Source: Podarcis muralis (Eukaryota). From it: a stretch of DNA of 64,000 nucleotides. The notes below the pieces were generated by a model. The model was not told where the DNA came from, made no database searches, and saw only the letters and a program-made list of their open reading frames with translations. Made by a program: the position numbers and the translations under genes. Numbering within the stretch: position 1 is the stretch's first letter; each line of letters starts with the position of its first letter. Positions 1 through 64,000 of this stretch are shown here, in pieces. The DNA is taken from assembly GCF_964188315.1 (NCBI RefSeq), contig NC_135656.1, positions 33,666,001 through 33,730,000 on the forward strand, read 5' to 3'.

Positions 1-212
1 ACTTCCTCTCTGCCCAAGAACATTAGAGGCCACACCTCCTCAACAGTATTTATAGGAACTCAAACACTGAGATCCTGCTCTGTTCCAGTAACAAGAAGCC
101 GAAAGCACCAGCCTGAAGATGACGAGTGAGACCTCGTCGAAACGTCGCCTAGACACCCCAACTTTTACACGGGAAGACACCCGAGGACACCAAAACCTGC
201 ATTCCTGTACCC
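1..212 (+). mobile_element. Probable Penelope-like element terminal (pseudo-LTR) fragment with a minimal hammerhead-like motif
   Basis: CTGAAGA-T-GACGAG-tgagac-CTCGTC-GAAAC-GTC at 113-146; non-coding; abuts an assembly gap. Confidence 0.5.
113..146 (+). ncRNA. Minimal type-I hammerhead ribozyme-like motif
   Basis: Core CUGANGA (113-119), perfect 6-bp stem II (121-126/133-138), GAAA (139-142), palindromic ACGU then C146 as putative cleavage site; stem I is weak. Confidence 0.5.
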
Positions 213-413
213 NNNNNNNNNNNNNNNNNNNNNNNNNNNNNNNNNNNNNNNNNNNNNNNNNNNNNNNNNNNNNNNNNNNNNNNNNNNNNNNNNNNNNNNN
301 NNNNNNNNNNNNNNNNNNNNNNNNNNNNNNNNNNNNNNNNNNNNNNNNNNNNNNNNNNNNNNNNNNNNNNNNNNNNNNNNNNNNNNNNNNNNNNNNTCTT
401 CTTCATTGTTCAG

Positions 414-731
414 GCCTTCTCTTCAACTGTGGAAGAGTTCAGGACACTCCCGTGTGCCTTTTCAGCTCTGCTTTCCACTCTCTGTGGGAAGATCACTTTC
501 CTCCAGTCTTTGATACAGGTTTCCCCTATCTTGGGGACAACATACATCCTAAGCTTTGGAGCTGGCGTGCTCTGGATGGTGCAGAGCTTCCTTTGTGCCT
601 CTGTCCTTAACAGTTACCATACTGTCCATTCTGAGATCTACCATCCAGCTATTGAGCCTCAGGATTATGAGATGATTGAGTTTTTGGTGAAAAGGTTGAA
701 GCTGTGGCTAGGACTTAGCAAAACCAAAGAG
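414..731 (+). CDS. PKD1-like penultimate coding exon (106 codons; last TM segments and start of cytoplasmic tail)
   Basis: cag|GCC at 411-414, GAG|gtaagc at 731/732; open frame AFSSTVEEFRTL...GLSKTKE. Confidence 0.88.
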
Positions 732-1964
732 GTAAGCGAGATAAAACACCCAAAGCAATAGAGGTGGTGGGTGGGGAGAAAAGAAAGAAAAAGGGAATGG
801 GGAATACAGCACTCTTCCGCACAGTCCTGTCTCAAGGGGAAGAGATGGAAAGTGAGAATGTGGCTGCTCTGTGGTGCTATTCTATGCTTGCTCTAGCACC
901 ACTTATGATGTGGTGGTAACTTGCAATACAAGCCACATGAAGGCAGCTTCACAGGGTTGAACTATTAATGCATAGCAGCTTCCCAGCTGTAAACAGCTGC
1001 TTACATAAATGTGATGACCATCTGAATGTCTCTTTTGTGTGAGCTGTTCTCCTCTAAATAGACTTGAGTATGATAACTCTGTAAGCTTGATTTCAGGATC
1101 AGTTTTGAGAGACCTTTCTCTATACCTCACACCACAATCTATATAAAGAATGGCAGCCTAGCTTGTCCCCATGATGGCTGAATTAGTTTTCCCAGACAAC
1201 AGGAAAAAGAGTTTGCAACAGATTTTGACCTCTTTGCCTTTCAGTTTCGCCACAAGGTGAAATTTGAAGGGATGGACTCCCTGATTTCCCACTCTTCTGG
1301 AAACTCCAAACCTTCTCGCCTTCCTTCTCCGGGCACCAACTTTCACTGTACTACTGCAACCATTTCTTCCTTCAGCTCTGAAGAGCTGGTGCTTCCTGAG
1401 AGCCCCATCCCTGATCCTTGCAATGTAGACTTTTACCTGGAGCACCTGCCATCTGCAGTCAATGATCTCCTGGACGGCTTTGACAGGGTCCTAAAGCTGA
1501 TGGAGGATGTGTGCCATCTTGAGACCAGCTTAGAGGAGACTCAGAGGAGAATTTGCAAGAAGAAGAAGAAGGGGCAGAAAAGCCATCCCATGGAAAAGGT
1601 AGCAACACTCGCCTCAAGAACCAGCTTAGGGCTGCCGAGAACTTACAGCACCTTCTCAGAGTCTGCCTTAGCCAGGCTCAGAGCTCACCATGTCAGGATT
1701 TCCAGCTGCAGTGCCACTGAAGGGGGCAAGCAGCACCCAGCGGATACCGTATCTCAGCAAAGCTCAACAGGATACAAGGTTCTGGTGGGCAACCCTCCAG
1801 CTTCAGGCCACATCTTCCAAAGCACTCTTCCCTGGCCGGCCCATTTGTTTAAAAAGAGACCCAGGAGTGAGGAAGGGCAGGGATATCTGTGTTGTGACGT
1901 GCTTCAGAGACAGATCCCTTTAAAGAGGAGAGCATGGCAGACCGAAGGAACAGGTGACATGTAG
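414..1964 (+). CDS. Polycystin-1 (PKD1)-family gene, last two coding exons (414-731, 1245-1964); probable PKD1 paralogue (pkd1b-like); 5' exons lie outside the window or in the gap
   Basis: AG at 412-413, GT at 732 and AG at 1243-1244 give a phase-0 join reading ...HSEIYHPAIEPQDYEMIEFLVKRLKLWLGLSKTKE|FRHKVKFEGMDSL.... This matches the recalled human PKD1 tail (GELYRPAWEPQDYEMVELFLRRLRLWMGLSKVKE|FRHKVRFEGMEPL), including the intron position. Coiled-coil-like VNDLLDGFDRVLKLMEDVCHLETSLEE at ~1458-1544; TAG at 1962-1964. Confidence 0.9.
1245..1964 (+). CDS. PKD1-like terminal coding exon (239 aa plus stop)
   Basis: Polypyrimidine tract and cag|TTT CGC CAC AAG at 1245; in frame with track ORF 1257-1964. 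Confidence 0.9.
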   Translation, partial: FRHKVKFEGMDSLISHSSGNSKPSRLPSPGTNFHCTTATISSFSSEELVLPESPIPDPCNVDFYLEHLPSAVNDLLDGFDRVLKLMEDVCHLETSLEETQRRICKKKKKGQKSHPMEKVATLASRTSLGLPRTYSTFSESALARLRAHHVRISSCSATEGGKQHPADTVSQQSSTGYKVLVGNPPASGHIFQSTLPWPAHLFKKRPRSEEGQGYLCCDVLQRQIPLKRRAWQTEGTGDM

Positions 1965-2200
1965 ACAACCTCTGTGTGGGTTTAACTGAGCGCAAGAGCC
2001 GGTACCCGTTTGTTTTCCCTCCTCGTGCTTCACTCACATAATGCAACTCACTGGAGAAGTAGGGTCCAGATTAACCTCCTTACCTTTGCTATCTTTCAGG
2101 GTACTACAGATTGGGTGGACTCTGCCTAGAATGCCTTAAGTTTTCTGCACAGGAAAATTAGAATTATAATGGTGCATGTAAAGTACTTTGTAGTGTATTA

Positions 2201-2409
2201 CAGTGGTACCTCGGGTTACATACGCTTCAGGTTACAGACTCCGCTAACCCAGAAATATTACCTCAGGTTAAGAACTTTGCTTCAGGATGAGAACAGAAAT
2301 CGTGCAGTGGCGGCGCGGCGGCAGCAGGAGGCCCCATTAGCTAAAGTGGTGCTTCAGGTTAAGAACAGACCTCCGGAATGAATTAAGTACTTAACCCGAG
2401 GTACCACTG
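2201..2409. mobile_element. Tc1/mariner (Tigger/pogo-like) MITE
   Basis: 18-bp TIR CAGTGGTACCTCGGGTTA/TAACCCGAGGTACCACTG, flanked by TA on both sides. Confidence 0.9.
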
Positions 2410-3812
2410 TACATTATTTACAATCTAGCACAGTAGCTTTGTGCAATCCTACTGTATTTTTGTACTACTGTCTGGAATGAAATACCTACAAGGAAGGCTT
2501 TAGGACAGGCATGGGCAACCTCAGGACAAGGGCCCAAATGCAGCCTCCAGGCCTCTTTATCAGGCGTTTCAAACTCTCTCCAAGCCACATCTTCCTTACC
2601 AACTCTCCACCCTCCCTAGCCCTGCTGCACTCCTGCGTATTTCTGCCTGACTGAAATGCATTCTTTCATGCCTCTTGCTTGTCTGGCTAGAGGATGTGTG
2701 TGTGTCAGTATTCTATGGGACAGTCTAAGAGAGCAGAACTTCTAGCTAGCTACATTAAGCATTACATTCTTGAAGTTGCTGCAAAAATACATCTGTAATC
2801 ACAGCCTTTGAGAACTTGTCATGTCTGTATTAAAACAATACATACATCCAACATACTATGCTTACTACCAAGTCCTTCATTAGCATCTGAGGGCAGGAGC
2901 CAGCAGAAGCCTTGCACAAAGGGGCCGCCCCCCCTTCTCTCCTTGACATTGGGTGCGAGGACTTCCAGAACAGCATAGAGGAAGGGGATATGCTTGTGCA
3001 GATGGAGCATTTGTAATAGCACTATGCAATCAGCATTTTTCATCAAGTTCCTGTAACTAGTTTCACATACAGGAGATAATGGCATCACCGGTAATGAACC
3101 CTTCATCGTAGGTTTACATCTGTTATACTTCTGCAAATGGGGGGGGGGGGGCACACACACAGCAAGACCTGAGCCCAGAAAAGATACTGGCAGTGAGAGA
3201 AAAGAGTGTACACGTTTTACGTTTTCACATTTCATCTTAGTAAAGAGAAACATACAAACTTCCTGGTGTGTGCCAGTGAGAAAAGAGCTGTCACAATGAA
3301 TAACTGAGAGGCTGTATGGGAGCCTGCAATGCTTTGAGAGAAGCCCATTGAGTACTTCAGTTCAACCAAACATTAACCACCTATTTCTAGGACTGCTGCC
3401 GATTAACTCTCGGAATAAGAGTAGGTTGTAGTTTATGTTTTTGATAGAAACAGGCCCTAATCAAGAACCCTGGTAAGGCAATGATGAGACTGTCAGTTTG
3501 TAACAGAGGAGACAAGCCTAACTTTCCTGTCCCTTAGTAGCACTGCAGCCCAAACACATTCAGTTCGCTCTATATACATCACACTTTGCCATTTTCACCA
3601 ATAGAAACCATTTCCCTAAGATGATAGTTTGTTCTAGTTGCTGTTGCCCATCATACTTTCGTAATGTCTACTGCAAGTCAAGTTGAATGCTGACGCAGTA
3701 CAGAGCCCGCAGCATTTTCTACTCCAGCGGTTGGTCCCTAACACCATAGATCCAGGCCATGATGCAGTTTGGAGGCAGAGATCCTATGCTTCTGGAGTCC
3801 GTATAAGCCTCA

Positions 3813-3959
3813 TTAGCTGTCACAAACTTGATTCTGTAGCTTCGTTACATTGTAAAATTGTTCATCCACATGGCTGGTTTGCTCAAGCAGCCACTGCCTT
3901 TCTTGCTCATCCACAATCAGTCTGAGTGTTACTTCGTGGAAGATGACATTGACTCCCAC
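3813..3959 (-). CDS. NAT9: NAT9 last coding exon
   Basis: tag|GTG...TAA; [36 protein letters not shown]...CDS*. Confidence 0.95.
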   Translation of the reverse strand: MGVNVIFHEVTLRLIVDEQERQWLLEQTSHVDEQFYNVTKLQNQVCDS

Positions 3960-6900
3960 CTAGACAGTGCACAAGATAATAATCCAAGTTAACTTTCGGG
4001 TCTGCAACAAATACAGAGTCAACTAAAGATGGTTCTGCTACATGAGGAATACTTATTAGCGCACCTCCTTGAAATGAATCTTTTTGAACATGCCAATACT
4101 GGCTTCATTTTCCAATCCAATTTTAGCTTCAAAGGTGTTTAGTCCCAGGCGAGTCATTCCTACAGGATAGAAGATTAGAAATAAGCTACTGTCTCTACTC
4201 TTGTCAATTTCATTTGGGAAGGTTGATCACATGTTCTGCATGCAGTATGTCCCATTTTCTCTCCCTGGCATCTCCAGGTAAGGTTGGAAATGTCTGAAAC
4301 CCTTGAGAGCCACTGTTAGCAAGTGTTGATAATACTAAGTGAGACGAAGTGATGTGCTTACTCGGTATAAGGCAGCTTCCTATGTTTCTACGATTATAGG
4401 CGATTGAAGGCTCTGTGTTCCAAGTATAAGCAGAAAAGTAAACTCATTAGCAAGGTATCTTAAAACTCTATGGCAGAATTTCAAAGTCTTGGAATGGAAA
4501 TCTTCTACCGCTATTGATGTACACAGAAATTAATCCTCCATGCATATGCAGTGCCCTCCAACACTTTCCAACTTCATGCCAGACACTCTTACCATAGGAC
4601 ATCATGATCAGAGTGGCTTCCTTGCCAAATCCTCTGCCACGATAGCTGGCCTCTGAAAGAGAGGAGCAGGGGAGAATTAAGAACTGTATCTGTTTCCAGG
4701 TTCATCTAGAACAAAGGTGGGGAACCTTTGGCCAACAGGAGGGTCTAGAATTTGGAATGGGTATCTCTCACGCACCCTAGAGTCTTCCTAATTCAAGGCC
4801 CTTTTTTTAAGACAAGAAGGTACAAGATATGCAACATTATTTATTTTTTTACAGAAAGATCAATCAGACTAAAGGGATACAGGGATAGGTGAAGAAAAAA
4901 GAAGAAGAGGCTCCTTTCTTGCACATTTAGTAAGATTTAGGCTTCATTTCTGAAAAATTCAGGACTGACAAAATACAACCCTGGCAGCTTGCACTGACCT
5001 ACCAAGGAATGACGCTAGGTCAGGTTGCAATAGTTGTGTCAGACATTTGTGCACAGGATGCTTGTTTATAACCTATTTTATTTTTTGTTGGCTTTGGTCA
5101 CTTCTGCTGAAGAGACAATCTTTTGAAGTAACTTGCTAAAGGCTGAAATATTGATGGGCCCATAAATTATAGAAGCGTTAGGTTACCTGCAATCATGATT
5201 TCGATCTCTCCAAGTGTTGGATCTTCACTGTCTGTGAGGAACAAGTTCACATCGCCCACCATGCAGTCTTCCTCCGTGGTTGTCTGCTTAGACCACTTAT
5301 CTGTGTCAAGCACTATAAATGTGCATTCTGGGGAATTTTTTAAAAAAGAAGCAGGCCCAATGGAGAACATTTAAAACCATTTTAAATGAAACCAGGGTCA
5401 ACTAATGCAGTAATTAATGGCAACCAGCACAATGTAAGAAGCTTCCTTCTTGACTTGGAATGAGAGATCTCTTGCTTCAGGCTGGGTGCAAAAGCCAATG
5501 CAACTCTTTCCCTGTCCCTCAAACCCTTAGGAAAATACAGAACTCTGGGAAGAATTTAATCTCACCTAATGTCAATTTGGGTCAAACCAAATGGGCAAGT
5601 GTTTGATGGGCCTATTCACTTTTTAAAAATATTAAAATCAGTGTGCAGGAGTTAGGAAAGAAATGTGTCTGCTTCCCTTCGCAGGAAAAAAAAAAGGGCC
5701 CATCTGAATTTTTATGTGGTAGCCGTAAGTAAGAAGGATGTTATAGTTCAGTTCCTGTGTACCTAACCACAGGTATTGGGCTAAAGAGAAGAACTTCCAC
5801 AGCATCCAGAGGACATTGCATGGAAATGGATAACTATAGATACCATGTTTAGGTAGCTGATATGCGATTCTTGGGTACTTGTGTATTCTGCGGTTTTGGC
5901 CCTGAGTACCTTCCAAGATTTAATTTTGCTCAGAATAAAGTTGCCATCTATTTCTACACAGTCCAAATTATCAGTATTAGTTATTACCATGTTAAACTGA
6001 TCAGCAGCTGAAATTTTAACATGGAAGAATCACTTTTATATGAATGGACCTTTAAATAAACTAGACAACATACATGCTCGCTACCCTCATCTTCAAGTCC
6101 TGACAAATATTTTAAAATCTCACTGTCTGCATCTTCCCGCCAACTGCGCTGCATCTCATATTCCTGTTCAAGGCTTAATGGCTCTGATGCAGTCAGACGC
6201 TGCAGCTCTTCAGACTTCATCCACTCATGGTACCTGGTGAGAAAATCCAGAGAGGGAATATATTCCTCTTCAGAACATTGCCTACTATGTTCTGTTGGAA
6301 AGGTAAACAAGATCTCCGCCATGAACCCATTTGAGGCATGAAATGACTGGCCCAGGCACACTTATACCAACATTCTATTTTATTTCTTCACAACATGAAA
6401 TAGGCACCACACAGACAGAAGAAATTATTCTTAATGGCTGGGTTCACCAAGGTTTAACTCTCATTCCACTTGTACTTAGGATGCCATTGAATGGGGGGGG
6501 GGTGGGAGCTGCACCTGGAGACAATATATTTAGAACAAAATACAACCTCTCTTTTCTGAGAGGGTGCCCCAGGCCCTGCCTTCCATATATACATATCTCT
6601 CATGTAGTAATGACAGATATATTACCAGTAAGCAATAAATATGTACATTTCTAATAATTCCCAAATATGTTGTTCTTACTGTTTACAACTGAGGTTTCCA
6701 AATGCCTGCAGAGTTAAAAATTAAGGCTGTAATCCTAATGCATACTAGTTTAGGAGAAAGCTCCACCACACTCAGTGGAATGTACATCTTAGTAAACATG
6801 CACCAGACAACAGTGATAAGTTCTTGGTAGTCTAGACAAGAGGTTACCATTACCATCATTCCCCTCCCCCCACAAGCACAGATGATTGATTTTGCCCACC

Positions 6901-7377
6901 TATGCATATTTCAGACCTGGACATACCTGCAGTTCTGTTATCTCAAAATGTAGGAGGTGTTATCAAAAATATTCCTATGAACATATGTGAAAATTTGAAT
7001 TTTTAAAAAAAGAAAAGTTAAAATCCCCCACAACTTTTGCATATATGCCCAATTAATATCAATAAACTGATCCATTAATACTTGCAGATCAGAGCAGTTA
7101 CAGGTAACTTCAGTGCTTATGGCTCAAGCAGTTTATCTGTTTGTTCCACTTGGAATGCAAATTAACAAACACATATTACAAACACACATATATAAAAAAA
7201 TCTTTTGCAAAGAAATATGTAAAGATGACTTAACATTCCAGACCTCTAAAGTCAATGCCCCCCCCCAAACTGGAGATTTGGCAAAGTATCTGTTTCATAC
7301 TTGGGTACATGAGCAGAGGTATATGGCACCAGGGTCACCCTCTTTCCCTGCAGTACAGTATTCTGGTTAATTCTCAT
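3813..7377 (-). CDS. NAT9: N-acetyltransferase 9 (GNAT family), 209 aa; coding exons 7377-7301, 6233-6124, 5327-5187, 4652-4593, 4159-4065, 3959-3813
   Basis: All introns are GT-AG and phase-compatible; CDS is 630 nt. Translation [45 protein letters not shown]...[11 protein letters not shown]...[11 protein letters not shown]...[21 protein letters not shown]...WLLEQTSHV matches recalled human NAT9, and the head-to-head arrangement with TMEM104 is as in human. Confidence 0.97.
4065..4159 (-). CDS. NAT9: NAT9 coding exon 5
   Basis: tag|GAATG...AAGGAG|gtgcg; [32 protein letters not shown]. Confidence 0.95.
4235..4390 (+). mobile_element. Old squamate SINE fragment (Squam3-like, family tentative)
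   Basis: Ends in ...tataaggcagcttcctatg; a related copy lies in opposite orientation at ~16178-16345. Confidence 0.5.
4593..4652 (-). CDS. NAT9: NAT9 coding exon 4 (acetyl-CoA-binding motif A, RGRGFG)
   Basis: cag|AGGCC...TATG|gtaag; [20 protein letters not shown]. Confidence 0.95.
5187..5327 (-). CDS. NAT9: NAT9 coding exon 3
   Basis: cag|AATGC...GCAG|gtaac; [11 protein letters not shown]...[25 protein letters not shown]. Confidence 0.96.
6124..6233 (-). CDS. NAT9: NAT9 coding exon 2
   Basis: cag|GTACCATGAG...GCAGACA|gtgag; [36 protein letters not shown]. Confidence 0.96.
7301..7377 (-). CDS. NAT9: NAT9 first coding exon (exon spans 7387-7301)
   Basis: Acceptor before 7387, ATG 7377-7375, donor AA|gtatga after 7301. 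Confidence 0.95.
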
Positions 7378-8279
7378 AGCTCCAAGCCTGCAACAAACAA
7401 GATTATGTTAGTGATACACTTTTTCAAAATAAATGTTATTGGTTCAGTTTTGAAATAAGAATGAACAACAACAAATGAGAGCAAAATATAACAATGCTAT
7501 ACAGAGGAATCATACATATCAATTTTAATATACAATCGGTCCATTTATATACAATAAAGTGTAAGATACACAATTTAAAGGGCAGCTGCAATATATTTGT
7601 GTACATAAAATGTAGTTTACCATGGTTCATTTGTGAGAGATATAATCTGTAATTTGACCAAAATAATTGCCGAGAGTATCTTGAAGCAGATGAACTGCAA
7701 GAAAACCCTACTTAATATTTCTCTTTGCCCCAGCCCCACCAGAAATGGTACAATGTTTAATAACAAAGAAAAAAACTACAGTGGTAGTACAAGAATTATG
7801 AAGCAACTGCAAAGGAGGTCCGGACTACTTAGTCATGCAGCTATAAAGCATTTGCTACACTGTGATTGAAACACAGGATAATTACAGCAGTTCATAATTG
7901 ACATCCAGGATTCAGAAGTTAAAACAGGAGGATGAGGAGGTGGAGGTGGTTGAGTGTCCGGGTGCAACCACACCGACAGCATTCCCTGGAAATAAATTCC
8001 ACAATTTTGCTTGCGCACTGCATGGAATTTATTCCATAACATTTATACACCACTTGAAGAAAACAAACAAACCTCAAAGCGAGCGAGTTACAAAAAAAAG
8101 GAATTAGACTTTGCATGTAACTTCTCCAGAGGCAACACTGAAGAGACATCAATCAGGGAGCCACTTTCGCAAGAGATCTTCCCCCACATACTACTCCTAA
8201 TCTCCAAACAGGCGTCATTTAGCCGCAATCTACACCTGAACCAGAGAAAGAGAGACAAGCTCCACTTTAAACCCACCCA

Positions 8280-9150
8280 AAGCCACGCGAGCGCCTATTT
8301 ACCTCGCTCCTCTACCATCCCAACCCAAGCCACACGCACGCGCAGTGGCCAAACTCTCCTTCCCGGTCGCGCTACGGTAGCCGCCGAGTCTCAATCCGAC
8401 CAGCGTCTTTCCCAACCACCGACAGACGCATACAGCCACACACCCCGCCCCCGTGGTCACGTGCCATCAGGAGACGGGACCAATCGGCGTAGAAAGCGAT
8501 TCGAGAGGTCGTGGTCACGCGCGCGGAAAGCTCGGCTGTTGGCGGCTTTTTGCTTGGCGTAGAAGCGCTGTTCCCTCCCTCCCCACTGCCCCGCCTACCC
8601 TCCCTCAGCTCCTCCGCTTGTGCGCGTGCGCCGTCTGCGGGTTCCCCTTGCTCGCGCCGGTAATGAGGGAAAACGACGGTTGGGAGTTGCTGGGCCGGAC
8701 GTTGCCGTGGAGCCGAGCGAGGAGCGCCGGCGTGGCGGGTAAAGAGGCTTGTTGTGAGGAGTTTTTTTGAGTGGGTGGCAGAAGGGGTGGTGGCGGCGGG
8801 GCGAAGTCCTGTGTGGCGACAGAAGGGGAAGCGGGCTGGCGGCCTGAGGCGGGTCGGGGAAAGGGTTGGCGGGGAAGACGTGGCATTCCCGACGACGCTC
8901 CTTCCCGCGCGGCTCTCCGGAGGAGGCTTTTAAATAGGCGCAGGCTGTGTGTGACTGTTCTGCCTGTCTCTGGGCTGTTCCCCCCCTGAAGGAGACCGCG
9001 CAGAGGACTATAGAATTGCCCCCCGCTCGGCGTGAGCATCTTCCCAAACAGCGAGGAAGATCTGCTGCCTACCAGGTGCAGGTGGTGGTCACGCGGTTGT
9101 CTGTATCTGCTCGGAGACCTAGTACACGTGCGCGTGTGCGAATTCACAGA
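8280..9150. promoter_or_regulatory. CpG island / bidirectional promoter shared by NAT9 and TMEM104
   Basis: Only strongly CpG-rich non-repeat segment, lying between divergent genes. GC box ~8444-8450, GGTCACGTG E-box 8455-8463, CCAAT 8480-8484, NRF1-like TGCGCGTGCGC 8621-8631. Candidate first-exon donors: NAT9 GAG|gtaaat at 8303/8302 (-) and TMEM104 CGG|gtaaag at 8738/8739 (+). Confidence 0.8.
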
Positions 9151-11059
9151 CTCCTATATGGGGAGAGAGAAAAGTTCATGCAATTGCTTGTGGGTGCATC
9201 TCTCTCCATCCATGGGAGTAGCCAGGATTTATGTTGTGGGGGTGGGTGGCAGGACACCCACCTGTCATCATCCTCTGGCTGGCTCTGTCTAGCAGATTTG
9301 GAATGAAAGGTCCCAACAACCGTTGCTTTAAATTGCTTTCTTTTGACCCCAAGTGCTCAGGGGAAAAAAATCTGTCAAAATCTTCCTGCAGTTTCTACTT
9401 TAAGTATTTTTATTGACTTTATGGGGGGAGGGGCAGCTGCATAGTGTACTGGTGGAGTAAAAAGCCTCTGAAGTAAAGCGGAAGCTGGTAGTTTCCAGTC
9501 TTTTTTGAGGATGAAACACAGCCTTGTAAATAAGGCCACAAAAATTACTAACCTACAGATGTTCTTATTAACCTACTAAGAGGCTAGTGATGTGCTTTTC
9601 CAGGCTGGCTGTGGAGGAGGGGCAGCCCCTCCTATTAGCAGACTAATAATATGCAGAATGGTGAAGAAAGGATGGAGTGATTCATCTCCACTATGCTAGC
9701 TTGCTACGTTTCTTTGCTGATTGTGAAGGAAACATTCTTACTTCCTCTTTTGTTAGTATGGAAACCAAGTAGGCTATCAATTCCCCTTCCCCACCCATTC
9801 ACATGTCTTTATAGAAGTCCTGCTCACCTATGGCCTCTAGGCTAGTGCGCAAAAATACAAGAGTGGTATTTCCCCCCCCCCCCCAACTATCTAAGTGGAC
9901 AGTTACATCTGTGGATTTTACTTTGTCATTATATTTGAATCAGGCTTTCTGGCATGACACTCACTCCAAATATCATTCCTTAACATTTGCTTTGTCTGCG
10001 CCTTGTAGTCTCATGCTTCAAATAACTGATGGAGCAATCCTAACCCCTTGCGGGGAGCAACAGAACAGCAGCTCAACCACTGCATCCCAAGCTTTACTGC
10101 TTATAGTGACTAGAATCAAAAGTGGTGGGTGGCTTGCGGGGGGGGGGGGGAGGGGGCTATAAAAGCTCCAGGCCGGCTCAGCAGAGTGCCCAAGGATTGA
10201 GACCTGCAGGGCTTTGGAACCAGAAGATTCCAAGCTGCCAGGCCCTGCCCCAAAATGCCTCATTTCAGATCTCTCTAATGGCTTATAGTGGTAGAATCAC
10301 TGTTGGTAGCTTTCTGTTTCTCTGGGTACAGCAGCGGATGCTGGCAGGAGCTGGTGGAGGGTCCCCTCTACCTTATCCTCCTCTTCCTCCAGCAGCAGCG
10401 ATTGAAAGGGTTAGGAGTACATTCTGAGTATCTTCTGATAAGAGGCCCTCTTTATCGTATTTTCTGTTCACGGTAGTAATTGCATACATCCAATCTGAGT
10501 GGCCATAGAAAGTCCAGGTAAAACTTTCCCATGCCATGCACTAAGATGCAAACAGGAGTAGGAGCTAGGAAATTCAGGACAGAGTGGTTTCTTCAACAAA
10601 GAGCCCAGCCTCAGCCAAAGAAGGGGACTTGTGAGCAAATGATCAGGGGTAAGAAAGCAGGGCCTTGGAAATCCTTGCTTTTTGTATTCAGGCACATGCA
10701 GTGCCTTCCATGGTACTTACACTTTGCCTGTAACTTTCTCTGGTTCTCTTTTTGGTTCAGTGGAATTGCTAATGTGTTAGATAAGAATCTTAGTGCCAAC
10801 TCATACAATACAGTATGGGTCCCCCCCATGTAAACATTTAGAAATTTTCCAGCACACACACTTGCATGAAGAAACTCATCACGTGGGGTAGCATGTTATG
10901 GATGGTGTTTTCCTCATTGTTGTAAAAGGTCTGTGTAGACTGCGAGGCTTTCCTGCCTATTTAAGCCTTGCTCCAGTAGCATGCTATAATTCTGTTTGGG
11001 TGGAGATTTTATTAGGGCCAATAAAAATGCCACAAAAAGTAAGCTTTCAAGTTCTGTTG

Positions 11060-13289: not shown

Positions 13290-16200
13290 TTATTATTTGT
13301 ACCCCGCCCATCTGGCTGGGTTTCCCCAGCCACTCTGGGCGGCTTCCATAGAAACAAAAAAAACACTAAAATATCACACATTAAAAACTTCCCTGAACAG
13401 GGCTGCCTTAAGATGTCTTCTGAATATCAGGTAGTTGTATATCGCTTTGAAATCTGATGGGAGGGCGTTCCACAGGGCGGGCGCCACTACTGAGAAGGCC
13501 CTCTGCCTGGTTCCCTGTAGCTTTGCTTCTCGCAATGAGGGAACCGCCAGAAGGCCCTCGGCGCTGGACCTCAGCGTCCGGGCAGAACGGTGGGGGTGGA
13601 GACGCTGCTTCGGGTATACTGGGCCGAGGTAGCCCCACGTAGAGTGCATTGCAGTAGTCCAAGCGGGAGATAACTAGAGCATGCACCACTCTGGCGAGAC
13701 AGTCTGCGGGCAGGTAGGGTCTCAGCCTGCGTACCAGGTGGAGTTGGTAGACAGCTGCCCTGGATACAGAATTGACCTGCGCCTCCATGGACAGCTGTGA
13801 GTCCAAAATGACTCCCAGGCTGCGCACCTGGTCCTTCAGGGGCACAGTTACCCTATTCAGGACCAGGGAGTCCTCCACACCAGCCCGCCCCCTGTCCCCC
13901 AAAAATAGTACTTCTGCCTTGTCAGGATTCAACTTTAATCCATTAGCCGCCATCCATCCTCCAACCGCCTCCAGGCACTCCACACAGGACCTTCACCGCC
14001 TTCACTGGTTCTGATTTGAAAGAGAGGTAGAGCTGGGTATTATCTGCATATTGATGGACACCCATATGTTAGATTATGATAGGTATAATACTAACAAGAG
14101 GGAAAAGAATCCCAAATATCAGAGGCAAGAGGAACTAAGTAATTTGGGTAGTGGATAGACTAGCCAGAAATTAGATGTGGTGAATTTTATCCCATGCTGT
14201 CCTTCCAGTCATGGAAGTCTCTTTGATCCAGCAGAGGATTCCATGAACAGTTGGAGGTGATTTTCATTAGTTCCACTTTTGTTCTACTATCACCTTCATA
14301 CCCTCCCCATCTATTTTTTTAAAAAATATTTTTTATTGAAGAATTTCTTGGTTTATAAAAGTACGCACATTGTTTCTTTTTTCAACTTCTAAAGTCCTTT
14401 CTACAGATCAGTTATATTTGACATGAGACATTAGTGTTGTATACAGTATAAGGTTGGGGGAAGAAGAGGGGGAGGGCCCCCTCCCCATCTTTTCTAGGGA
14501 ATTGGAGAATCCTCTGACACAGTATGGTGAAGAAAGGAGAAATTTGCAAAAATCACCTCCCTTTTTTGTCTGCAGATGCCTGTATGGGAACAAAGAACCT
14601 TCCATGTAAAGAAGGACAGCATTGGTTACAACTTGGCACCTTCAAAGCAGTTTTCAAACTTGTGCCATTTAGTGATGTAGTTGTGCAAAGTTACACCAGG
14701 CTGTTCTTCTGTGAAGCTGAACAGGTGTTATCCTGTAATTTCACTTAATGGAAGGCTATCTGGAAGCCATATGTAAAAGGCTCTTCAGGGAAGAGCAGTG
14801 CGCTAAATACTAAATACATGATTATACTTTTCTGGTTGTGAAGTCTTTAGGGCAGTGACACATTCTCTTACAGTCTAGACCGCTTCATGGAACAATAAAA
14901 AGACATGTGCACTAACAATGTGCACAAGATTCCTGGGTGCATGTTTACATCAGTCAGTGCAGAGGCATTCTGCAACACGGGACAAAGCTTTTTAAAATTT
15001 GTGTGGCTTTCTTAAATGGCTGATAGGCTGTACTTGCGCCAATGGGTTCTGTTCTGTTTCCATAGTTGGAATTCTTGTTGCTGCCATCTTGCAGCAACAA
15101 GTGGTTAAAACATCAGGAAAGTATTTTTTTTATATAAAAATTGAGATGAACAAGGAGGCTTTGAAAGCAGTGCACATACATACACAAGAGTTGAGAGTTG
15201 TTGAAGCTGCATCTTATGATGCCCTTTTATGGCATACCAGTGGACTCTGTCCTCCTTCCTAATATATAACCCATCACATCTCTCTGTCAAAGCTATCCTC
15301 TTGAGTGGTGGTTTTCTGATTGCAAGTGATTTTTGAGAAGACATTAATCGGATAGTGATGTGTGCTGGTACATTTAGTCCAAGGAAGATTGATCTGAATC
15401 TTCAAGGGGAAAAATAGACTCCCAAGATGTTAAATTACCAAGTACCTTACAGATTGAAAATTATAGCATTGCAGAAATCTTCAGGCTGTTGAGCATAAAA
15501 ATGGTACTTGTCTCATTTTTGGAGGGCCCGAAATATGATTCTACCAGTATCTGAAATAAATCTTCCCTCCCTATACTGTTCTTTTTAATCAGAGTCAAAG
15601 AAAACCTCCAAGGTTTCTGTCCTCAAAGGCTTCGTGTGCAGAACCAATTAAGGCCTAGAGCCAGGAGGTGGTGTATGCAGGGAATGACAGTTCTGCCCAA
15701 CGAGTTAAAAAAATTGCTTTGCAAACTGACATCTACTGTTTCATCCTCTGGGAAAGCAGTCAAAAGATGCATTTGCTGTTCAGATGCCAGTAAGTACAGG
15801 AGGACCTTGTTCTCTCAAAGAGAAGTGAATGGCTATGCATAAAAGGTCTCTGAAGGATGCATTTGTAGTTCAGAACTTCTGCCATGAGCATTTGGTTTAT
15901 AAACTGTATACATTCCCTGTTGTTAAGGTAATTTTATTTATGGCTACTCTTGGTTTAAAAATTGTGTGTTTGACAGTGGACGTGAATTCCAGGTAGATGG
16001 TTGTCTTCTGATAATGGGCATTCCAGTAATTTTAATAAGGTGAAGGTAGCCATCAGTGGTGCTCTTTCTCTCATCCTCCTTGCACTACTTTCTTGCACTT
16101 CAAGTCTAATGGATACTGTATCTTACATGACACATGATTTTAATAAGTTTAAATTATTTTCCTGCTAGTGCCCAGGGCTCATAGGAAGCAGCTGTATACT

Positions 16201-18961
16201 GAGTGTCACCATTAGTTCATCTGCTTCGGTGTTGTCTGAATTGGCTAGTAGTTGCTCTCCAGGGGTTCAAGAAGAAATCTTTCCCAGCTCTACTTGGAGA
16301 TGCTAGGGTTTGAATCTGGAGTCTTTTACATTCAGATATTGTCATCTGTCACTGAGCTGCCACCTTAATTACCCATTGTGGTTCTGACTTACCAAATCTA
16401 CTCATACATGAGTTCTTCATGCTACGTTTTAATACAGAACTGTTTTAGTTATGAGGGCACTGCCCCCCAAATAGTAATGAATCTTGTTTTTGCTGCAGAT
16501 AGAGCCAGTGTTGAACCTACAGGATAAAGCAGATTATAAATAGAAATTGTGGAAGCTGAACCCCTTGAGGTAGTTCCATTTTAGCACTTTGTGCTGTGGG
16601 GAGGCAAGTAGGTTTTTACTAAACAAAAGAGCAAATCTCTTTTGCTGTTATTATTAATGTAATATTCTTCAATAAACAAGAATAATGCCTGGTCTTAGCC
16701 TGCCATTTAAATGTAAGAACTGAGGCAGGAACTAATTCAGAATAGCTCTTCTTAAGGGTTGATTTTACTGTCAACAAGCTTGTCATGCAGATATTCCCAT
16801 TCGTTAACAAGATTCCTCTGGTGTCCCAATAAGGGAAAATTTCCTTCTGCTTCACTGCTAAATATACTTGGGAGGAAAATTACTTGTCAGACTCCTGTTT
16901 GGCTAATAGTTGGCAAGCTGTGGAATGCTCCTTTAATACCTCACATCCTATATTGCCTCCTCATGGGTGAAGTTGAGTAACTGTACCACCCTTCCCCCTA
17001 TAAAAAAACCTCAGCCTCTCTGCAACACCTTTAGTTTCAGAGAATCTTTCCTTTGGAGTTAGAAACATGGCAAGTGAGAGAACTGCATAACTTGAGTAAA
17101 CATGATGTTTTGAGGCTATGTCCTTTCACCAGTATGTCTGGTCTTTCTGCTTAACTCTTGCTATGTGGAGAAGGAGGTTTTATCTGTAATCTCCCTCATC
17201 CTGAAGGCTTAGGTTGGGAAAACAAGAAATAAACTATTGGGCTATTGGAAAGTTGTGGTTTGCATAGGTTTTTTGTTGTTGTTGTTTAAACCCAGCTGTT
17301 AATATTTCTAAGGCCAAACATTAAACACTGCCTAACTGTGTAAGTATGAGCTAAAAAGCATTTCTTTACTGAGACGATAATATTTTCTATAAAACTGCAC
17401 CATCATAGTAGCCGTGTTGGTTTGGATTGTCTATGGAGGCTGCTGCTTTCTGTCCATTTTGGGATTGCTAGCCAAAGAGTCTTTTTTAACAACTAAAAGT
17501 CACATGATTTTAACATTTATGATTTCTTTAATTGCAGGTTGGCCTGGTTTACATGTTCAATCTCATAGTTGGGACTGGAGCTCTGACTATGCCAAAGGCC
17601 TTTGCCACTGCTGGTTGGCTTGTCAGCCTCATCCTAATAATGTTCTTGGGATTCATGAGGTAAGAGTTTTCTGAATGTCAATTTCCATTAACAATCTACT
17701 GGGAACTTGTAAATCCCAAACGTGTCACTTGTATCTAAGTAATACAATCCATTTGTCACCCAGCCATTGTGATTTCAATAAGAAAGTTGTGCCTTGGCCT
17801 TGAGGGAGTGTTTTACAGAAGGCAGATCAGACAGTATTCTTACCAAGTTCCTTCCCCCACATGTGCTGAAGAGTAAGAATGCACTTTCCTCCCTGCCCAT
17901 TTGGCACATCAGCCCTTGCCTCCATTGCCACCTTACATCCATACATAGGTGTTCTAATATGGGGTGCATTTGCTCGAGTTCTGTGGTCAGAGATTGGACA
18001 TTTATTGCACATTCTGAGCCCACACATGTTGCACGTTAAATGTGAACACCCTGTTTGAACGTTATGTACAATAACATCAGAGGCAAGACAGGTGATGCTT
18101 GGATGGACAGGGAGCAGAACTTGCTCTAGCTTCCTGCCACGTGTAGAATAGCAATCTGGGTACAGTCTGAATTTTATCCAATGAGGCCTAGCATCTGTCT
18201 CATGGATACCAGAAATTACTGGATACCTGCCCATCTTAAGATGGTAGGAAAGAGAGTTCTCTCTTCCTTCTATCCCATTTCTGAGTTTTCTGTCTGTGGC
18301 CAAGTCAAAAGGACTTTGCTCTTTTACGTTTCCTCACACTTGATGTTGTTATCTCTCATGGATTGTCTTTTGCTCCTTAGAGGAATTATGTTTGTTAATA
18401 GTAGTGAAAAGCTGATGAAACTTTAACATTGCAAAAGTCAAACCTCATCAAAACAACTTTGGTTGTAGAATAGGAGGTTAACAGGGACTACTGCCAGGCT
18501 TGCTCCTTGGCATCTTCCTCCCAGGCGTCATAGGAGCATGATTTATTCAGTAGCTGGATGATCTGAAATGGGTTGCTAGGTATCTTGAGCACAATTGGAA
18601 AAAAGATTTGTGAATCTGACCAAGCACAATATAGAGGCCAGTTGCAGACTTTTGAGGTGGTGGTGAGGGTATTTCTGCCTCCTTACCACTATTGGGTGAG
18701 CTGAATTGTGTCTAGCTAAGCTTTCCTTGGTTTTTTTTGGTTTTTTGATTGGTTTAGGTTATTAAATTCAGGCTCCTGGGCAGGAGCAGCTACCCTGGTG
18801 TGCAGAAAACTTGTTTGCTATGTCCTTTCCCTTTAGCTTCTGAGAACCAATATATAAAGCTGATTATTAGCTGATAGTGTGTAGCATATGCTCCACAATA
18901 CTAAGGTGTCATTTTTCTGATTAAATGTAAAAGCTTGCTTTAACTTTAAAAATAAAATAAA

Positions 18962-24900: not shown

Positions 24901-26618
24901 CCTTGAATGGTATGCTAGCATTCTGTTTTAATTGCTGTGATGGATAACTTCACCCAGCAGAGGGTGCTCAGGTCACATGTGTGAATTCAGAACAGTAGTA
25001 GTTGAATATTATTTAATTATTTAATTATTCAACTTGTAATTCACACAAAACCTTCATTCTTTAGTTTTCCCTTTACCATAAGTAGACCATGCTGTAAAGT
25101 TCCCTCTTTTAGACGAGAGAATGTGAATATTGAATAATTACAGTAGGTTTGGTGAAAGAAGGCCCCCCTCAAAGTCATGGATACCTGTATTTCCACGATA
25201 TTTGCTTCTGTTCTGTCTTATGTGTTAAGTGACATCTTATATGTTATATGTTAAAGTGACATCTTGGTGCTCAGAGTTTTGAAAGCATCATGCAGGTTTC
25301 ACAGATCCACAAGTAGCTTGATAGTAATAGAAGTTAGCTTTCTGAGTATCTCTGAGCTCTATAAAGTAACTAGTTTCTGTATCAAGAAAAGTTGTGCAGA
25401 AAGTTTTAAAATGTCTGGATGGTGTCTGTGAAAGATCTTGAAATGGATTTTGGAGGTGGTCTTAAACCTGTAGCCTCCATTTGTGCCCTTTAGGTCTGAT
25501 ATTATTCTCATTTTCTTACATCTGCTGCATCTCTTTCCTTGTCATAACTGTAATGCAACAGTAAGTCATCAATTTATGCAAATTTGGATAGTACAGGAAG
25601 ATGAATTTTTTGATGGATCGCAGACCCTTGATGTGTCAAGAAAATTGGCTGCGCATGTTGGCAGACTGTTTTTGTACACACAACTTTTATGGATGAGGTG
25701 AAAGCTAATGTTTAATTAAACATGTATTAGAGCAGGCATAGGCAAATTCGCCCCTCCAGATGATTTGGGACTACAGTTGCCATCATCCCTGACCACTGGT
25801 CCTGTTAGCTAGGGATGATGGGAGTTGTAGTCCCAAAAAACATCTGGAGGGCCGAGTTTGCCTATGCCTGTATTAGAGTGACCAGCTTAGTGTTTAAATC
25901 CTGGAGAGTGATTTTGAAAGATAGGGCATGCAGATTGGCCGGACTCTCTTGGGTTTCAATCAGCACACTATTGTGGCCCCTTTTAAAAGTTGCTCAAGTC
26001 ACTTGATCTCCTTCAGATAGGTGGTAGTGAGGATTTCCTTAAAGAGCCATTTCCCCAAACTTCTCAGGTAATTTTAAGAGGTTGCAGATCCCACAGATCA
26101 TTTGATAGGCAAGATATTTTGATACTAGGCTTGAAGAGCCCCTTCATTTTAAAGCAGAGTTGGATAACCTGTGCCCTCTGGATGTTGTTTTAGTACTACT
26201 CCCCAAATCCCTAATCACTGGACATGCTAAATGGGACCAATGGCAGTTGAGAGTTCAGCAATGTATGGAGGGCCACAGGTTCCCCAACCCTATTTTAAAG
26301 GCACCAGTAGGCCCCATCATTCTGCCCAGACACTGAGGTCCAGTGCCGAGGGCCTTCTGGTGGTTCCCTCGCTGCGAGAAGCCAAGTTACAGGGAACCAG
26401 GCAAAGGGCCTTCTCAGTAGTGGCGCCCGCCCTATGGAACGCCCTCCCACCAGATGTCAAAGAGAAAAACAACTACCAGACTTTTAGAAGACATCTGAAG
26501 GCAGCCCTGTTTAGGGAAGCTTTTAATGTTTAATAGGCTATTGTATTTTAATATTCTGTTGGAAGCTGCCCAGAGTGGCTGGGGAAACACAGCCAGATGG
26601 GCAGGGTATAAATAAATT

Positions 26619-62324: not shown

Positions 62325-64000
62325 CAGTGGTACCCCGCAAGACGAATGCCTCGCAAGACGGAAAACCCGCAAGACGAAAGGGTTTTCTGTTTTGGAGGCG
62401 CTTCGCAAGACGAATTTCCCTATGGGCTTGCATCGCAAGACGAAAGCCCATAGGGAAATGCTGGCGGTCGGGAGCAAAGACTTTCGCCCACAGCCGGCCT
62501 TCACAAGAGGACCTCTTCTGAAGGCCGGCGGGGGGCAAAAGTCTTTGCTCCCCCCCGCCTGCCTTCCCCCCGCCTGCCGGGGGCGATCTTAAAATGCTGG
62601 CGGGCGGGAGCGAAGCGTTCGCTGCCGACCCCCAGCATTTTAAAATCTCCAAGGGACAGCAGAGAAGTCTCTGTCCCGGGGAGATTTTAAAATGCTGGGG
62701 GTCGGGAGCGAAGCGCTGCCGACCCCCTGCATTTTAAAATCTCCCCGTGTCCCGGGAAGGTTTTAAAATGCTGGGGGTCGGGAGCGAAGCGCTGCCGACC
62801 CCCTGCATTTTAAAATCTCCCCGTGTCCCGGGGAGGTTTTAAAATGCTGGGGGTCGGGAGCGAAGCGCTGCCGACCCCCAGCATTTTAAAACGCTGTTCC
62901 GAAGGGGGGGGGACACCTGCCCCAGCCGCCCCACTTCGGAAAGCTGTTCCGAAGCGGGGAGGGGGGGCGGGGACATCTGCCCCAGCCGCCCCACTTCGGA
63001 AAGCTGTTCCGAAGCGGGGAGGGGGGGGCGGGGACATCTGCCCCAGCCGCCCCACTTCGGAAAGCTGTTCCGAAGCGGGGAGGGGGGGCGGGGACATCTG
63101 CCCCAGCCGCCCCACTTCGGAAAGCTGTTCCGAAGCGGGGAGGGGGGGCGGGGACATCTGCCCCAGCCGCCCCACTTCGGAAAGCTGTTCCGAAGCGGGG
63201 AGGGGGGGCGGGGACATCTGCCCCAGCCGCCCCACTTCGGAAAGCTGTTCCGAAGCGGGGAGGGGGGGCGGGGACATCTGCCCCAGCCGCCCCACTTCGG
63301 AAAGCTGTTCCGAAGCGGGGAGGGGGGGGCGGGGACATCTGCCCCAGCCGCCCCACTTCGGAAAGCTGTTCCGAAGCGGGGAGGGGGGGCGGGGACATCT
63401 GCCCCAGCCGCCCCACTTCGGAAAGCTGTTCCGAAGCGGGGAGGGGGGGCGGGGACATCTGCCCCAGCCGCCCCACTTCGGAAAGCTGTTCCGAAGCGGG
63501 GAGGGGGGGCGGGGACATCTGCCCCAGCCGCCCCACTTCGGAAAGCTGTTCCGAAGCGGGGAGGGGGGGCGGGGACATCTGCCCCAGCCGCCCCACTTCG
63601 GAAAGCTGTTCCGAAGCGGGGAGGGGGGGCGGGGACATCTGCCCCAGCCGCCCCACTTCGGAAAGCTGTTCCGAAGCGGGGAGGGGGGGCGGGGACATCT
63701 GCCCCAGCCGCCCCACTTCGGAAAGCTGTTCCGAAGCGGGGAGGGGGGGCGGGGACATCTGCCCCAGCCGCCCCACTTCGGAAAGCTGTTCCGAAGCGGG
63801 GAGGGGGGGCGGGGACATCTGCCCCAGCCGCCCCACTTCGGAAAGCTGTTCCGAAGCGGGGAGGGGGGGCGGGGACACCTGCCCCAGCCGCCCCACTTCG
63901 GAAAGCTGTTCCGAAGCGGGGAGGGGGGGCGGGGACACCTGCCCCAGCCGCCCCACTTCGGAAAGCTGTTCCGAAGCGGGGAGGGGGGGCGGGGACACCT
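62325..64000. mobile_element. Tigger/pogo-like non-autonomous element with an internal satellite; right end beyond the window
   Basis: TA|CAGTGGTACCCCG terminus like the 2201 MITE; repeated subterminal CGCAAGACG(A/G)A; then palindromic ~70-bp repeats and a 60-bp array. Confidence 0.75.
62894..64000. repeat. G-rich minisatellite, ~18 near-identical copies of a 60(-61)-bp unit
   Basis: Unit gaaagctgttccgaagcggggagggggggcggggacatctgccccagccgccccacttcg; variation is almost only in G-run length and cacct/catct. Confidence 0.97.

What the first reader, a model, noticed from the sequence alone, without database searches (positions are those of the whole stretch)
414..1964. Apparently intact second polycystin-1 (PKD1 paralogue) in a lizard, at a locus where I know of no mammalian PKD1 gene
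Seen: two spliceable exons with an uninterrupted frame encoding the diagnostic PKD1 tail (EPQDYEMIEFLVKRLKLWLGLSKTKE|FRHKVKFEGM). The intron falls exactly at the human PKD1 KE|FR junction. Known: canonical PKD1 is tail-to-tail with TSC2, whereas human NAT9-TMEM104 neighbours SLC9A3R1/RAB37 with no PKD1-type gene. Inference: this is a retained paralogue (pkd1b-like, described in fishes as I recall) lost in mammals, and likely unnamed and unstudied in squamates. It could be a separate polycystin receptor partnering PKD2-type channels.
Basis: partly seen in the sequence, partly recalled or inferred. Interest (0 to 1): 0.88.

Follow-up and report, generated by a model that had tools for sequence, protein, structure and literature searches.

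The report
Lizard copy of fish pkd1b gene
The stretch holds the last two coding exons of a real, expressed second polycystin-1 gene in the common wall lizard; it is the counterpart of fish pkd1b, a gene that public annotation already predicts in reptiles and amphibians and that I did not find in mammals or birds.

Summary
Window 414-731 and 1245-1964 (+) are two exons joined by a 513-nt GT..AG intron. They encode 345 aa with a polycystin-1-type last TM helix, EPQDYEM, KE|FRHKVKFEGM and a coiled coil.

These 345 aa are 100% identical to the C-terminus of RefSeq XP_077780301.1, "polycystin-1-like [Podarcis muralis]". That model is 4573 aa and has the full LRR-WSC-lectin-PKD-REJ-GPS-PLAT-channel architecture.

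RNA contigs from four runs, three studies and two species carry the spliced junction.

A maximum-likelihood tree gives two gnathostome-wide clades, each with 100 support. The window falls in the pkd1b clade with shark, gar, teleost pkd1b, coelacanth, amphibians, turtles, crocodilians and other squamates. It does not fall with canonical PKD1, which Podarcis also has. An AU test rejects grouping it with PKD1 (p 0.002).

The tail-to-tail PKD1B/NAT9 arrangement is shared from shark to lizard.

dN/dS against Zootoca is 0.27 over 4092 codons.

However, the gene is already modelled in public annotation, and the family was described in fish; England et al. 2017 inferred loss somewhere in the lobe-finned lineage. 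What is new is only a refinement: the gene is retained in amphibians and non-avian reptiles, and no bird or mammal protein turned up. Interest is modest.

The parts
414..731 (+). Penultimate coding exon of PKD1B (residues 4229-4334 of XP_077780301.1). It encodes the last TM helix and the start of the cytoplasmic tail (EPQDYEM...SKTKE).
   Evidence: Translation. Human polycystin-1 match at E 2e-11. Exact match in L001 at 84611. RNA contigs begin their match exactly at 414 and continue into upstream exons.
732..1244 (+). Last intron: 513 nt, phase 0, GT..AG, at the KE|FR position.
   Evidence: Sequence. The spliced joint is seen in X5, X9, X6 and X12, with zero depth inside the intron. The same intron position occurs in Sceloporus PKD1 and in crocodile, Zootoca and bowfin PKD1B.
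1245..1964 (+). Last coding exon: 239 aa plus the TAG stop. It holds FRHKVKFEGM, a Ser/Pro-rich linker, the coiled coil (LLDGFDRVLKLMEDVCHLETSLEE), a Lys run and the distal tail.
   Evidence: Translation. Human polycystin-1 tail match over residues 1-116. 96% identity to Zootoca. Alignment of both clades. In RNA contigs the stop is either kept or changed to TAA.
1965..2727 (+). 3' UTR of PKD1B (minimum extent). It abuts or overlaps the 3' UTR of the convergent NAT9 gene.
   Evidence: The spliced contigs run on to 2222 (X5), 2225 (X6) and 2579 (X9). A separate X6 contig, not joined to the spliced one, covers 2386-2727. The NAT9 last-exon contig reaches down to 2833.
2199..2410 (.). SINE-like repeat inserted in the 3' UTR. 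The insertion is polymorphic.
   Evidence: Depth here is 10^5-fold that of the flanks. The joint 2198>2410 that skips it is present in X1 and X9 contigs and in 4 X23 reads.
3813..7377 (-). NAT9 (Acetyltransf_3) coding range, convergent with PKD1B.
   Evidence: Called gene at L001 88010-91574, converted with the 84197 offset. CT..AC joints at 3956/4062, 4652/5187 and 5327/6124 in RNA.
17532..17660 (+). Exon of the next gene, an Aa_trans family member consistent with TMEM104.
   Evidence: Pfam Aa_trans 28.7 bits, above the 25.6 cut-off. The ORF was found.

Best explanation
The stretch is the 3' end (the last two of at least 42 coding exons) of PKD1B in Podarcis muralis. PKD1B is the ancient sister gene of PKD1. 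It arose before the split of cartilaginous and bony vertebrates and is known in fish as pkd1b. The gene encodes a 4573-aa polycystin-1-type receptor. The extracellular part has LRR, WSC, C-type lectin, about 13 PKD repeats and REJ, with a GPS site carrying the HL/T autoproteolysis motif. This is followed by PLAT, eleven TM helices with a polycystin/TOP domain and a channel-like S1-S6 module, and a cytoplasmic tail with a coiled coil. Shown here: the gene is intact, spliced, transcribed, under purifying selection and orthologous to pkd1b. Inferred: like polycystin-1, it is cleaved at the GPS and assembles through its tail coiled coil and TM module with a PKD2-family channel subunit, forming a receptor-channel complex. 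In zebrafish, pkd1b is expressed in spinal-cord progenitors and floor plate and not in the pronephros (PMC5318412), so it probably acts in tissues other than those dominated by PKD1.
For: The 345 aa are 100% identical to the C-terminus of XP_077780301.1. The full PKD1 domain set is present in that protein. 4263 of 4573 residues map at identity to the genome in 42 colinear blocks. The tree has two clades, each supported at 100 SH-aLRT and each recapitulating vertebrate phylogeny; the window sits in the clade holding the Callorhinchus, Esox and Megalops proteins that sources name 'polycystic kidney disease 1b'. The AU test rejects union with PKD1 (delta lnL 363, p 0.002). A separate canonical PKD1 exists in Podarcis. 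PKD1-TSC2 adjacency is seen in Sceloporus. PKD1B/NAT9 tail-to-tail is found in lizards, crocodile, caecilian and shark. The GPS HLT motif, KEFRHKV and the FDRV..EDV..LE coiled coil are conserved. dN/dS is 0.27 overall (CI 0.22-0.33) and 0.21 for the tail. The spliced junction is seen in four RNA runs. Variants in the RNA contigs comprise 12 synonymous and 10 nonsynonymous changes and only in-frame indels.
Against: Only 345 of 4573 residues are in the window; the rest relies on a RefSeq model from the same species. Two stranded RNA libraries (X23, X24) show no sense reads over the exons, so expression is tissue-restricted or low. In several other squamates the locus is annotated as split or partial models; this could be annotation noise or could indicate decay in those lineages. 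Partnership with PKD2, GPS cleavage and any channel function are inferred from conservation and were not tested. An omega of 0.27 indicates moderate rather than strong constraint.
Confidence: 0.93

Rival explanations
1. It is the canonical PKD1 orthologue, either moved next to NAT9 by rearrangement or placed there by misassembly.
For: The tail motifs are nearly the same as in PKD1.
Against: Identity to Anolis and Callorhinchus PKD1 in exon 1 is only 36%, against 47-70% to clade B proteins. The tree and the AU test reject it. Podarcis has its own canonical PKD1. The NAT9 adjacency is reproduced in independent assemblies of seven species.
Confidence: 0.01
2. It is a transcribed but decaying gene (a unitary pseudogene in the making), as in the lineages where no copy was found.
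For: No mammal, bird, snake or iguanian protein appeared in the clade B searches, and models in other squamates are split. There were no sense reads in two RNA libraries.
Against: There is an uninterrupted 4573-codon model. dN/dS is 0.27, with a bootstrap interval well below 1. The stop codon is conserved or swapped for another stop, and indels are multiples of three. Correct splicing is seen in two species. The GPS and coiled-coil motifs are conserved.
Confidence: 0.04
3. It is a functional PKD1B that does not pair with PKD2. Instead it works with PKD2L1/PKD2L2, or alone as an adhesion-GPCR-like receptor signalling through its tethered agonist and tail.
For: The GPS/GAIN motif is conserved. 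In zebrafish, pkd1b and pkd2 overlap only weakly, in the floor plate (PMC5318412).
Against: The coiled coil, which in PKD1 binds PKD2, is conserved in both clades. No data here discriminate between partners.
Confidence: 0.2

Closest known systems
Fish pkd1b (zebrafish, gar, elephant shark; England et al. 2017, PMC5318412; Mangos et al. 2010 as cited there)
   Same: It falls in the same clade in the tree. It has the same architecture, the same tail signature (KVKFEGM; HLTVFG at the GPS) and, in shark, the same NAT9 neighbour.
   Different: The host is a lizard. [quoted passage not shown] Here the gene is seen in coelacanth, amphibians, turtles, crocodilians and several squamate families. The bowfin locus has a different downstream gene, and the paper reports no shared synteny for zebrafish pkd1b.
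Canonical PKD1 (polycystin-1; PDB 6A70, 8Z6F)
   Same: The domain order is the same, as are the GPS HLT motif, the last TM, EPQDYEM, KEFRHKV, the coiled coil and the intron at KE|FR.
   Different: It is a separate clade of pre-gnathostome origin. Identity in the penultimate exon is 36%. Its neighbour is NAT9, not TSC2. There are clade-specific substitutions: HLTVFG versus HLTAFG, and KVKF versus KVRF.
RefSeq XP_077780301.1, polycystin-1-like [Podarcis muralis]
   Same: Identical over all 345 aa, so this is the gene itself.
   Different: No difference in sequence. The database name does not say that it is the pkd1b orthologue.

Membership tests
Polycystin-1 subfamily (PKD1-type 11-TM receptors) | C-terminal tail with the KEFRHKV(R/K)FEGM motif and a coiled coil after the last TM helix | tested here: met
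Polycystin-1 subfamily (PKD1-type 11-TM receptors) | PKD_channel / polycystin domain TM module | tested here: met
   The exon alone scores 18.6 bits, below the 22.4 cut-off. The full protein scores 80.2 bits for PKD_channel and 67.7 bits for Polycystin_dom.
Polycystin-1 subfamily (PKD1-type 11-TM receptors) | LRR, WSC, C-type lectin, multiple PKD repeats, REJ and PLAT in order | tested here: met
   on P0249. These domains lie outside the window, in the same species and gene.
Polycystin-1 subfamily (PKD1-type 11-TM receptors) | GPS autoproteolysis motif HL/T | tested here: met
   C..TEHLTVFG aligned with PKD1 C..TQHLTAFG. Cleavage itself was not tested.
pkd1b orthology group | Groups with fish and shark pkd1b to the exclusion of PKD1 | tested here: met
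   both clades at 100 SH-aLRT; AU p 0.002.
pkd1b orthology group | Conserved genomic neighbourhood | tested here: met
   NAT9-type gene tail-to-tail in Podarcis, Zootoca, Elgaria, Varanus, Crocodylus, Microcaecilia and Heptranchias. Not so in Amia.
pkd1b orthology group | Co-existence with a separate TSC2-linked PKD1 in the same genome | tested here: inconclusive
   A separate PKD1 protein exists in P. muralis and P. raffonei. TSC2 adjacency is shown only in Sceloporus. The Podarcis look-ups found no record.
pkd1b orthology group | Heteromer with a PKD2-family subunit | not testable with these tools
   Inferred from the conserved coiled coil.
Canonical PKD1 orthologue | Falls in the PKD1 clade and lies tail-to-tail with TSC2 | tested here: not met

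The most novel reading that the evidence does not exclude
PKD1B is a second, fully functional polycystin-1 receptor that the tetrapod ancestor kept. It survives in amphibians, turtles, crocodilians and several lizard families. It was lost independently in mammals and in birds, and possibly in snakes and iguanians. If so, the ADPKD gene has a living sister gene in model-accessible tetrapods, where the division of labour between the two could be studied.
Probability: 0.6. Interest if true: 0.45.

Novelty: new member of a known kind. Interest (0 to 1): 0.3.

Why it matters
PKD1 is the main gene of dominant polycystic kidney disease. Its sister gene pkd1b has been studied only in zebrafish and is often treated as a fish matter. 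This work shows that an intact, expressed, constrained PKD1B sits at the ancestral NAT9 locus in a lizard, and that public annotation also holds it in amphibians, turtles and crocodilians. That narrows where it was lost: no bird or mammal protein was found. It also offers tetrapod systems for asking which PKD1 functions were once shared between two genes. This is an incremental refinement of known gene-family history, not a new kind of system.

Tried and rejected
- Look-ups of the Podarcis canonical PKD1 proteins, intended to see TSC2 beside them, found no record. Sceloporus was used instead.
- The 10 kb upstream of PKD1B in P. muralis, compared with crocodile, Zootoca, Elgaria and Varanus, holds only retroelement pieces and no conserved neighbour exon. 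The upstream neighbour stays unknown, and the RAB37/NHERF1 paralogon idea rests on memory only.
- The Atlas search of a TMEM104-like exon was uninformative.
- Pfam found nothing on the ORF spanning a NAT9 exon; NAT9 rests on the called gene model.
- Rfam found nothing in 1-9000.
- The raw stranded runs X23 and X24 gave no sense reads for PKD1B. The few reads over 1597-1796 are antisense, in the same direction as NAT9.
- The X1 contig 1436-3396+ probably merges convergent transcripts, and its 529>1436 joint looks chimeric.
- The first dN/dS script timed out and was rewritten.
- PKD1L1-3 and PKDREJ were not added to the tree because no such sequences were fetched; domain architecture and tail motifs exclude them.
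- Earlier scan notes: nothing near this place.

Full report
**Observation**

The + strand of window 414-731 translates without a stop to 106 aa, ending ...EPQDYEMIEFLVKRLKLWLGLSKTKE. Window 1245-1964 gives 239 aa plus TAG and begins FRHKVKFEGM. The 513-nt interval between them starts GT and ends AG, and position 414 follows a cag acceptor. An N run (214-396) lies in the preceding intron and was left alone.

Against all PDB chain sequences, the only significant matches are human polycystin-1. Exon 1 matches at E 2e-11. Exon 2 matches at E 1.5e-5, and that alignment runs through the coiled coil. Pfam gives a sub-threshold PKD_channel hit on the exon alone.

**Transcription**

RNA-library contigs from X5 and X6 (organism A; two studies) and from X9 and X12 (organism B) each join 731 to 1245 with GT..AG ends and have no depth in the intron. 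The X5 contig continues 181 nt 5' of position 414, so 414 is a true exon start.

Contigs carry the 3' UTR to at least about 2700. The last exon of the convergent NAT9 gene reaches down to about 2833, so the two 3' ends abut or overlap.

Reads on NAT9 calibrate the stranded raw runs X23 and X24 as the dUTP type. Those runs have no sense reads on the PKD1B exons, so expression is tissue-restricted or low.

Variants in the contigs comprise 12 synonymous changes (including TAG>TAA) and 10 nonsynonymous changes. The only indels are 3 or 6 nt, in a Lys run.

**Identity**

A HMMER scan of 1.84 billion proteins with exon 1 gave the following:
- a gecko fragment at 69% identity;
- a caecilian 'polycystin-1-like' at 62%;
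- a turtle protein at 58%;
- Callorhinchus 'polycystic kidney disease 1b' at 47%;
- canonical PKD1 of Anolis, Callorhinchus and the caecilian at only 36%.

The joined 345 aa are 100% identical to the C-terminus of XP_077780301.1, 'polycystin-1-like [Podarcis muralis]', which is 4573 aa. The window is therefore from the common wall lizard, and the gene is already modelled.

That protein has LRRNT/LRR, WSC, C-type lectin, 13 PKD stretches, REJ, PLAT, Polycystin_dom and PKD_channel. It maps colinearly to the genome in 42 identity blocks covering 4263 residues.

The window is offset from locus L001 by exactly 84197. This places NAT9 at 3813-7377 (-). An Aa_trans exon consistent with TMEM104 lies at 17532-17660 (+).

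**Orthology**

The tree used 36 sequences: the last 1400 aa of each full-length protein, plus the shorter gecko fragment and the window's 345-aa tail. It was run under LG+C20 with amphioxus, acorn worm and brachiopod outgroups. It splits vertebrate sequences into two clades, each with 100 SH-aLRT support and each following vertebrate phylogeny.
- One clade holds canonical PKD1. It includes P. muralis and P. raffonei PKD1, plus a goose and a marsupial.
- The other clade holds the window. It also contains Zootoca, a gecko, turtle, crocodile, caecilian, axolotl, Xenopus, coelacanth, bichir, sturgeon, gar, the teleost proteins that sources name pkd1b, and chondrichthyans.

Forcing the squamate members of the second clade to join PKD1 costs 363 lnL units, and the AU test gives p 0.002.

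Clade-specific signatures are HLTVFG versus HLTAFG at the GPS, and KVKFEGM versus KVRFEGM in the tail. The HL/T motif and the FDRV..EDV..LE coiled coil are kept in both clades.

The KE|FR intron is shared with Sceloporus canonical PKD1 and with crocodile, Zootoca and bowfin PKD1B, as expected for old paralogues. The human position was not testable here.

**Synteny**

- In Sceloporus, canonical PKD1 is flanked by a Ras-family gene and, tail-to-tail, by TSC2 (Tuberin, Rap_GAP).
- PKD1B is followed tail-to-tail by a roughly 210-250-aa Acetyltransf_3 gene (NAT9) in Podarcis, Zootoca, Crocodylus, Microcaecilia, the shark Heptranchias and Elgaria. In Varanus the same position holds a 407-aa model that also carries an RVT_1 hit.
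- Bowfin differs.
- The Podarcis PKD1 locus itself could not be fetched.

**Constraint**

Nei-Gojobori dN/dS between P. muralis and Zootoca over 4092 codons is 0.27, with a bootstrap interval of 0.22-0.33 and dS 0.093. For the 344 tail codons it is 0.21 (0.10-0.50).

**Distribution**

Full-length clade B proteins are annotated in caecilians, salamanders, frogs, turtles, crocodilians, lacertids, coelacanth, sharks and ray-finned fish.

Shorter or split models exist in Elgaria (2343+977 aa), Varanus, Rhineura, three geckos and P. raffonei (4065+523 aa).

No bird, mammal, snake or iguanian protein appeared in these searches, although their canonical PKD1 proteins are abundant in the same database. 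This is absence at the annotation level only.

**Literature**

England et al. 2017 (PMC5318412) found pkd1b in elephant shark, gar and teleosts. [quoted passage not shown] They report zebrafish pkd1b in spinal-cord progenitors and floor plate and not in the pronephros, and they suggest a Pkd2/Pkd1b complex.

All 22 papers that mention pkd1b concern fish or other topics. Searches for reptile or tetrapod discussion found nothing relevant.

**Mechanism**

Shown here: an intact, spliced, constrained PKD1-type gene that is orthologous to pkd1b.

Inferred: GPS cleavage, and assembly with a PKD2-family subunit through the conserved coiled coil and TM module, giving a receptor-channel complex. It probably acts in tissues different from those where PKD1 acts.

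**Verdict**

The gene is already in public annotation and belongs to a described family. The only addition is a sharper picture of where the gene is retained and lost. I rate it a new member of a known kind, with interest 0.3.

Noticed in passing
window 2199-2410: A SINE-like element sits in the PKD1B 3' UTR and is present in the assembly. Contigs of X1 and X9, and four reads of X23, skip it (joint 2198>2410), so the insertion is polymorphic within or between wall-lizard lineages. The element family is extremely abundant in RNA libraries.
   Followed up: partly
window 1557: There is an in-frame length polymorphism (3 or 6 nt shorter) in the AAG/Lys run of the tail, seen between runs and between species.
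   Followed up: partly
window 1597-1796 and 2800-3800: In the dUTP-stranded runs X23 and X24, all reads here have the NAT9 (minus-strand) direction, including a few over the PKD1B last exon. The NAT9 3' UTR or read-through therefore runs antisense into PKD1B, and the two convergent 3' ends overlap or nearly so.
   Followed up: partly
window 62904-63997 (and 62672-62891): A GC-rich minisatellite of 18 or more copies of a 60-bp unit at 99% identity runs off the window end. It is preceded by 2.9 copies of a 76-bp unit. The long ORFs there are repeat artefacts.
   Followed up: partly
window 13374-13983 (-) and 26231-26533 (+): These are retroelement ORF fragments that share the same C-terminal motif (...RAFSVVAPALWNALP...). 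Similar reverse-transcriptase pieces lie upstream of PKD1B in L001.
   Followed up: no
L006 (Elgaria), L007 (Varanus); P0247+P0393 (P. raffonei): In these squamates, PKD1B is annotated as two or more adjacent partial models at the same NAT9-linked locus. I did not determine whether this reflects annotation breaks or real disruptions.
   Followed up: partly
window 8000-10000: A GC-rich stretch (0.52, against about 0.40 around it) lies between NAT9 and the next gene, consistent with a shared bidirectional promoter.
   Followed up: no
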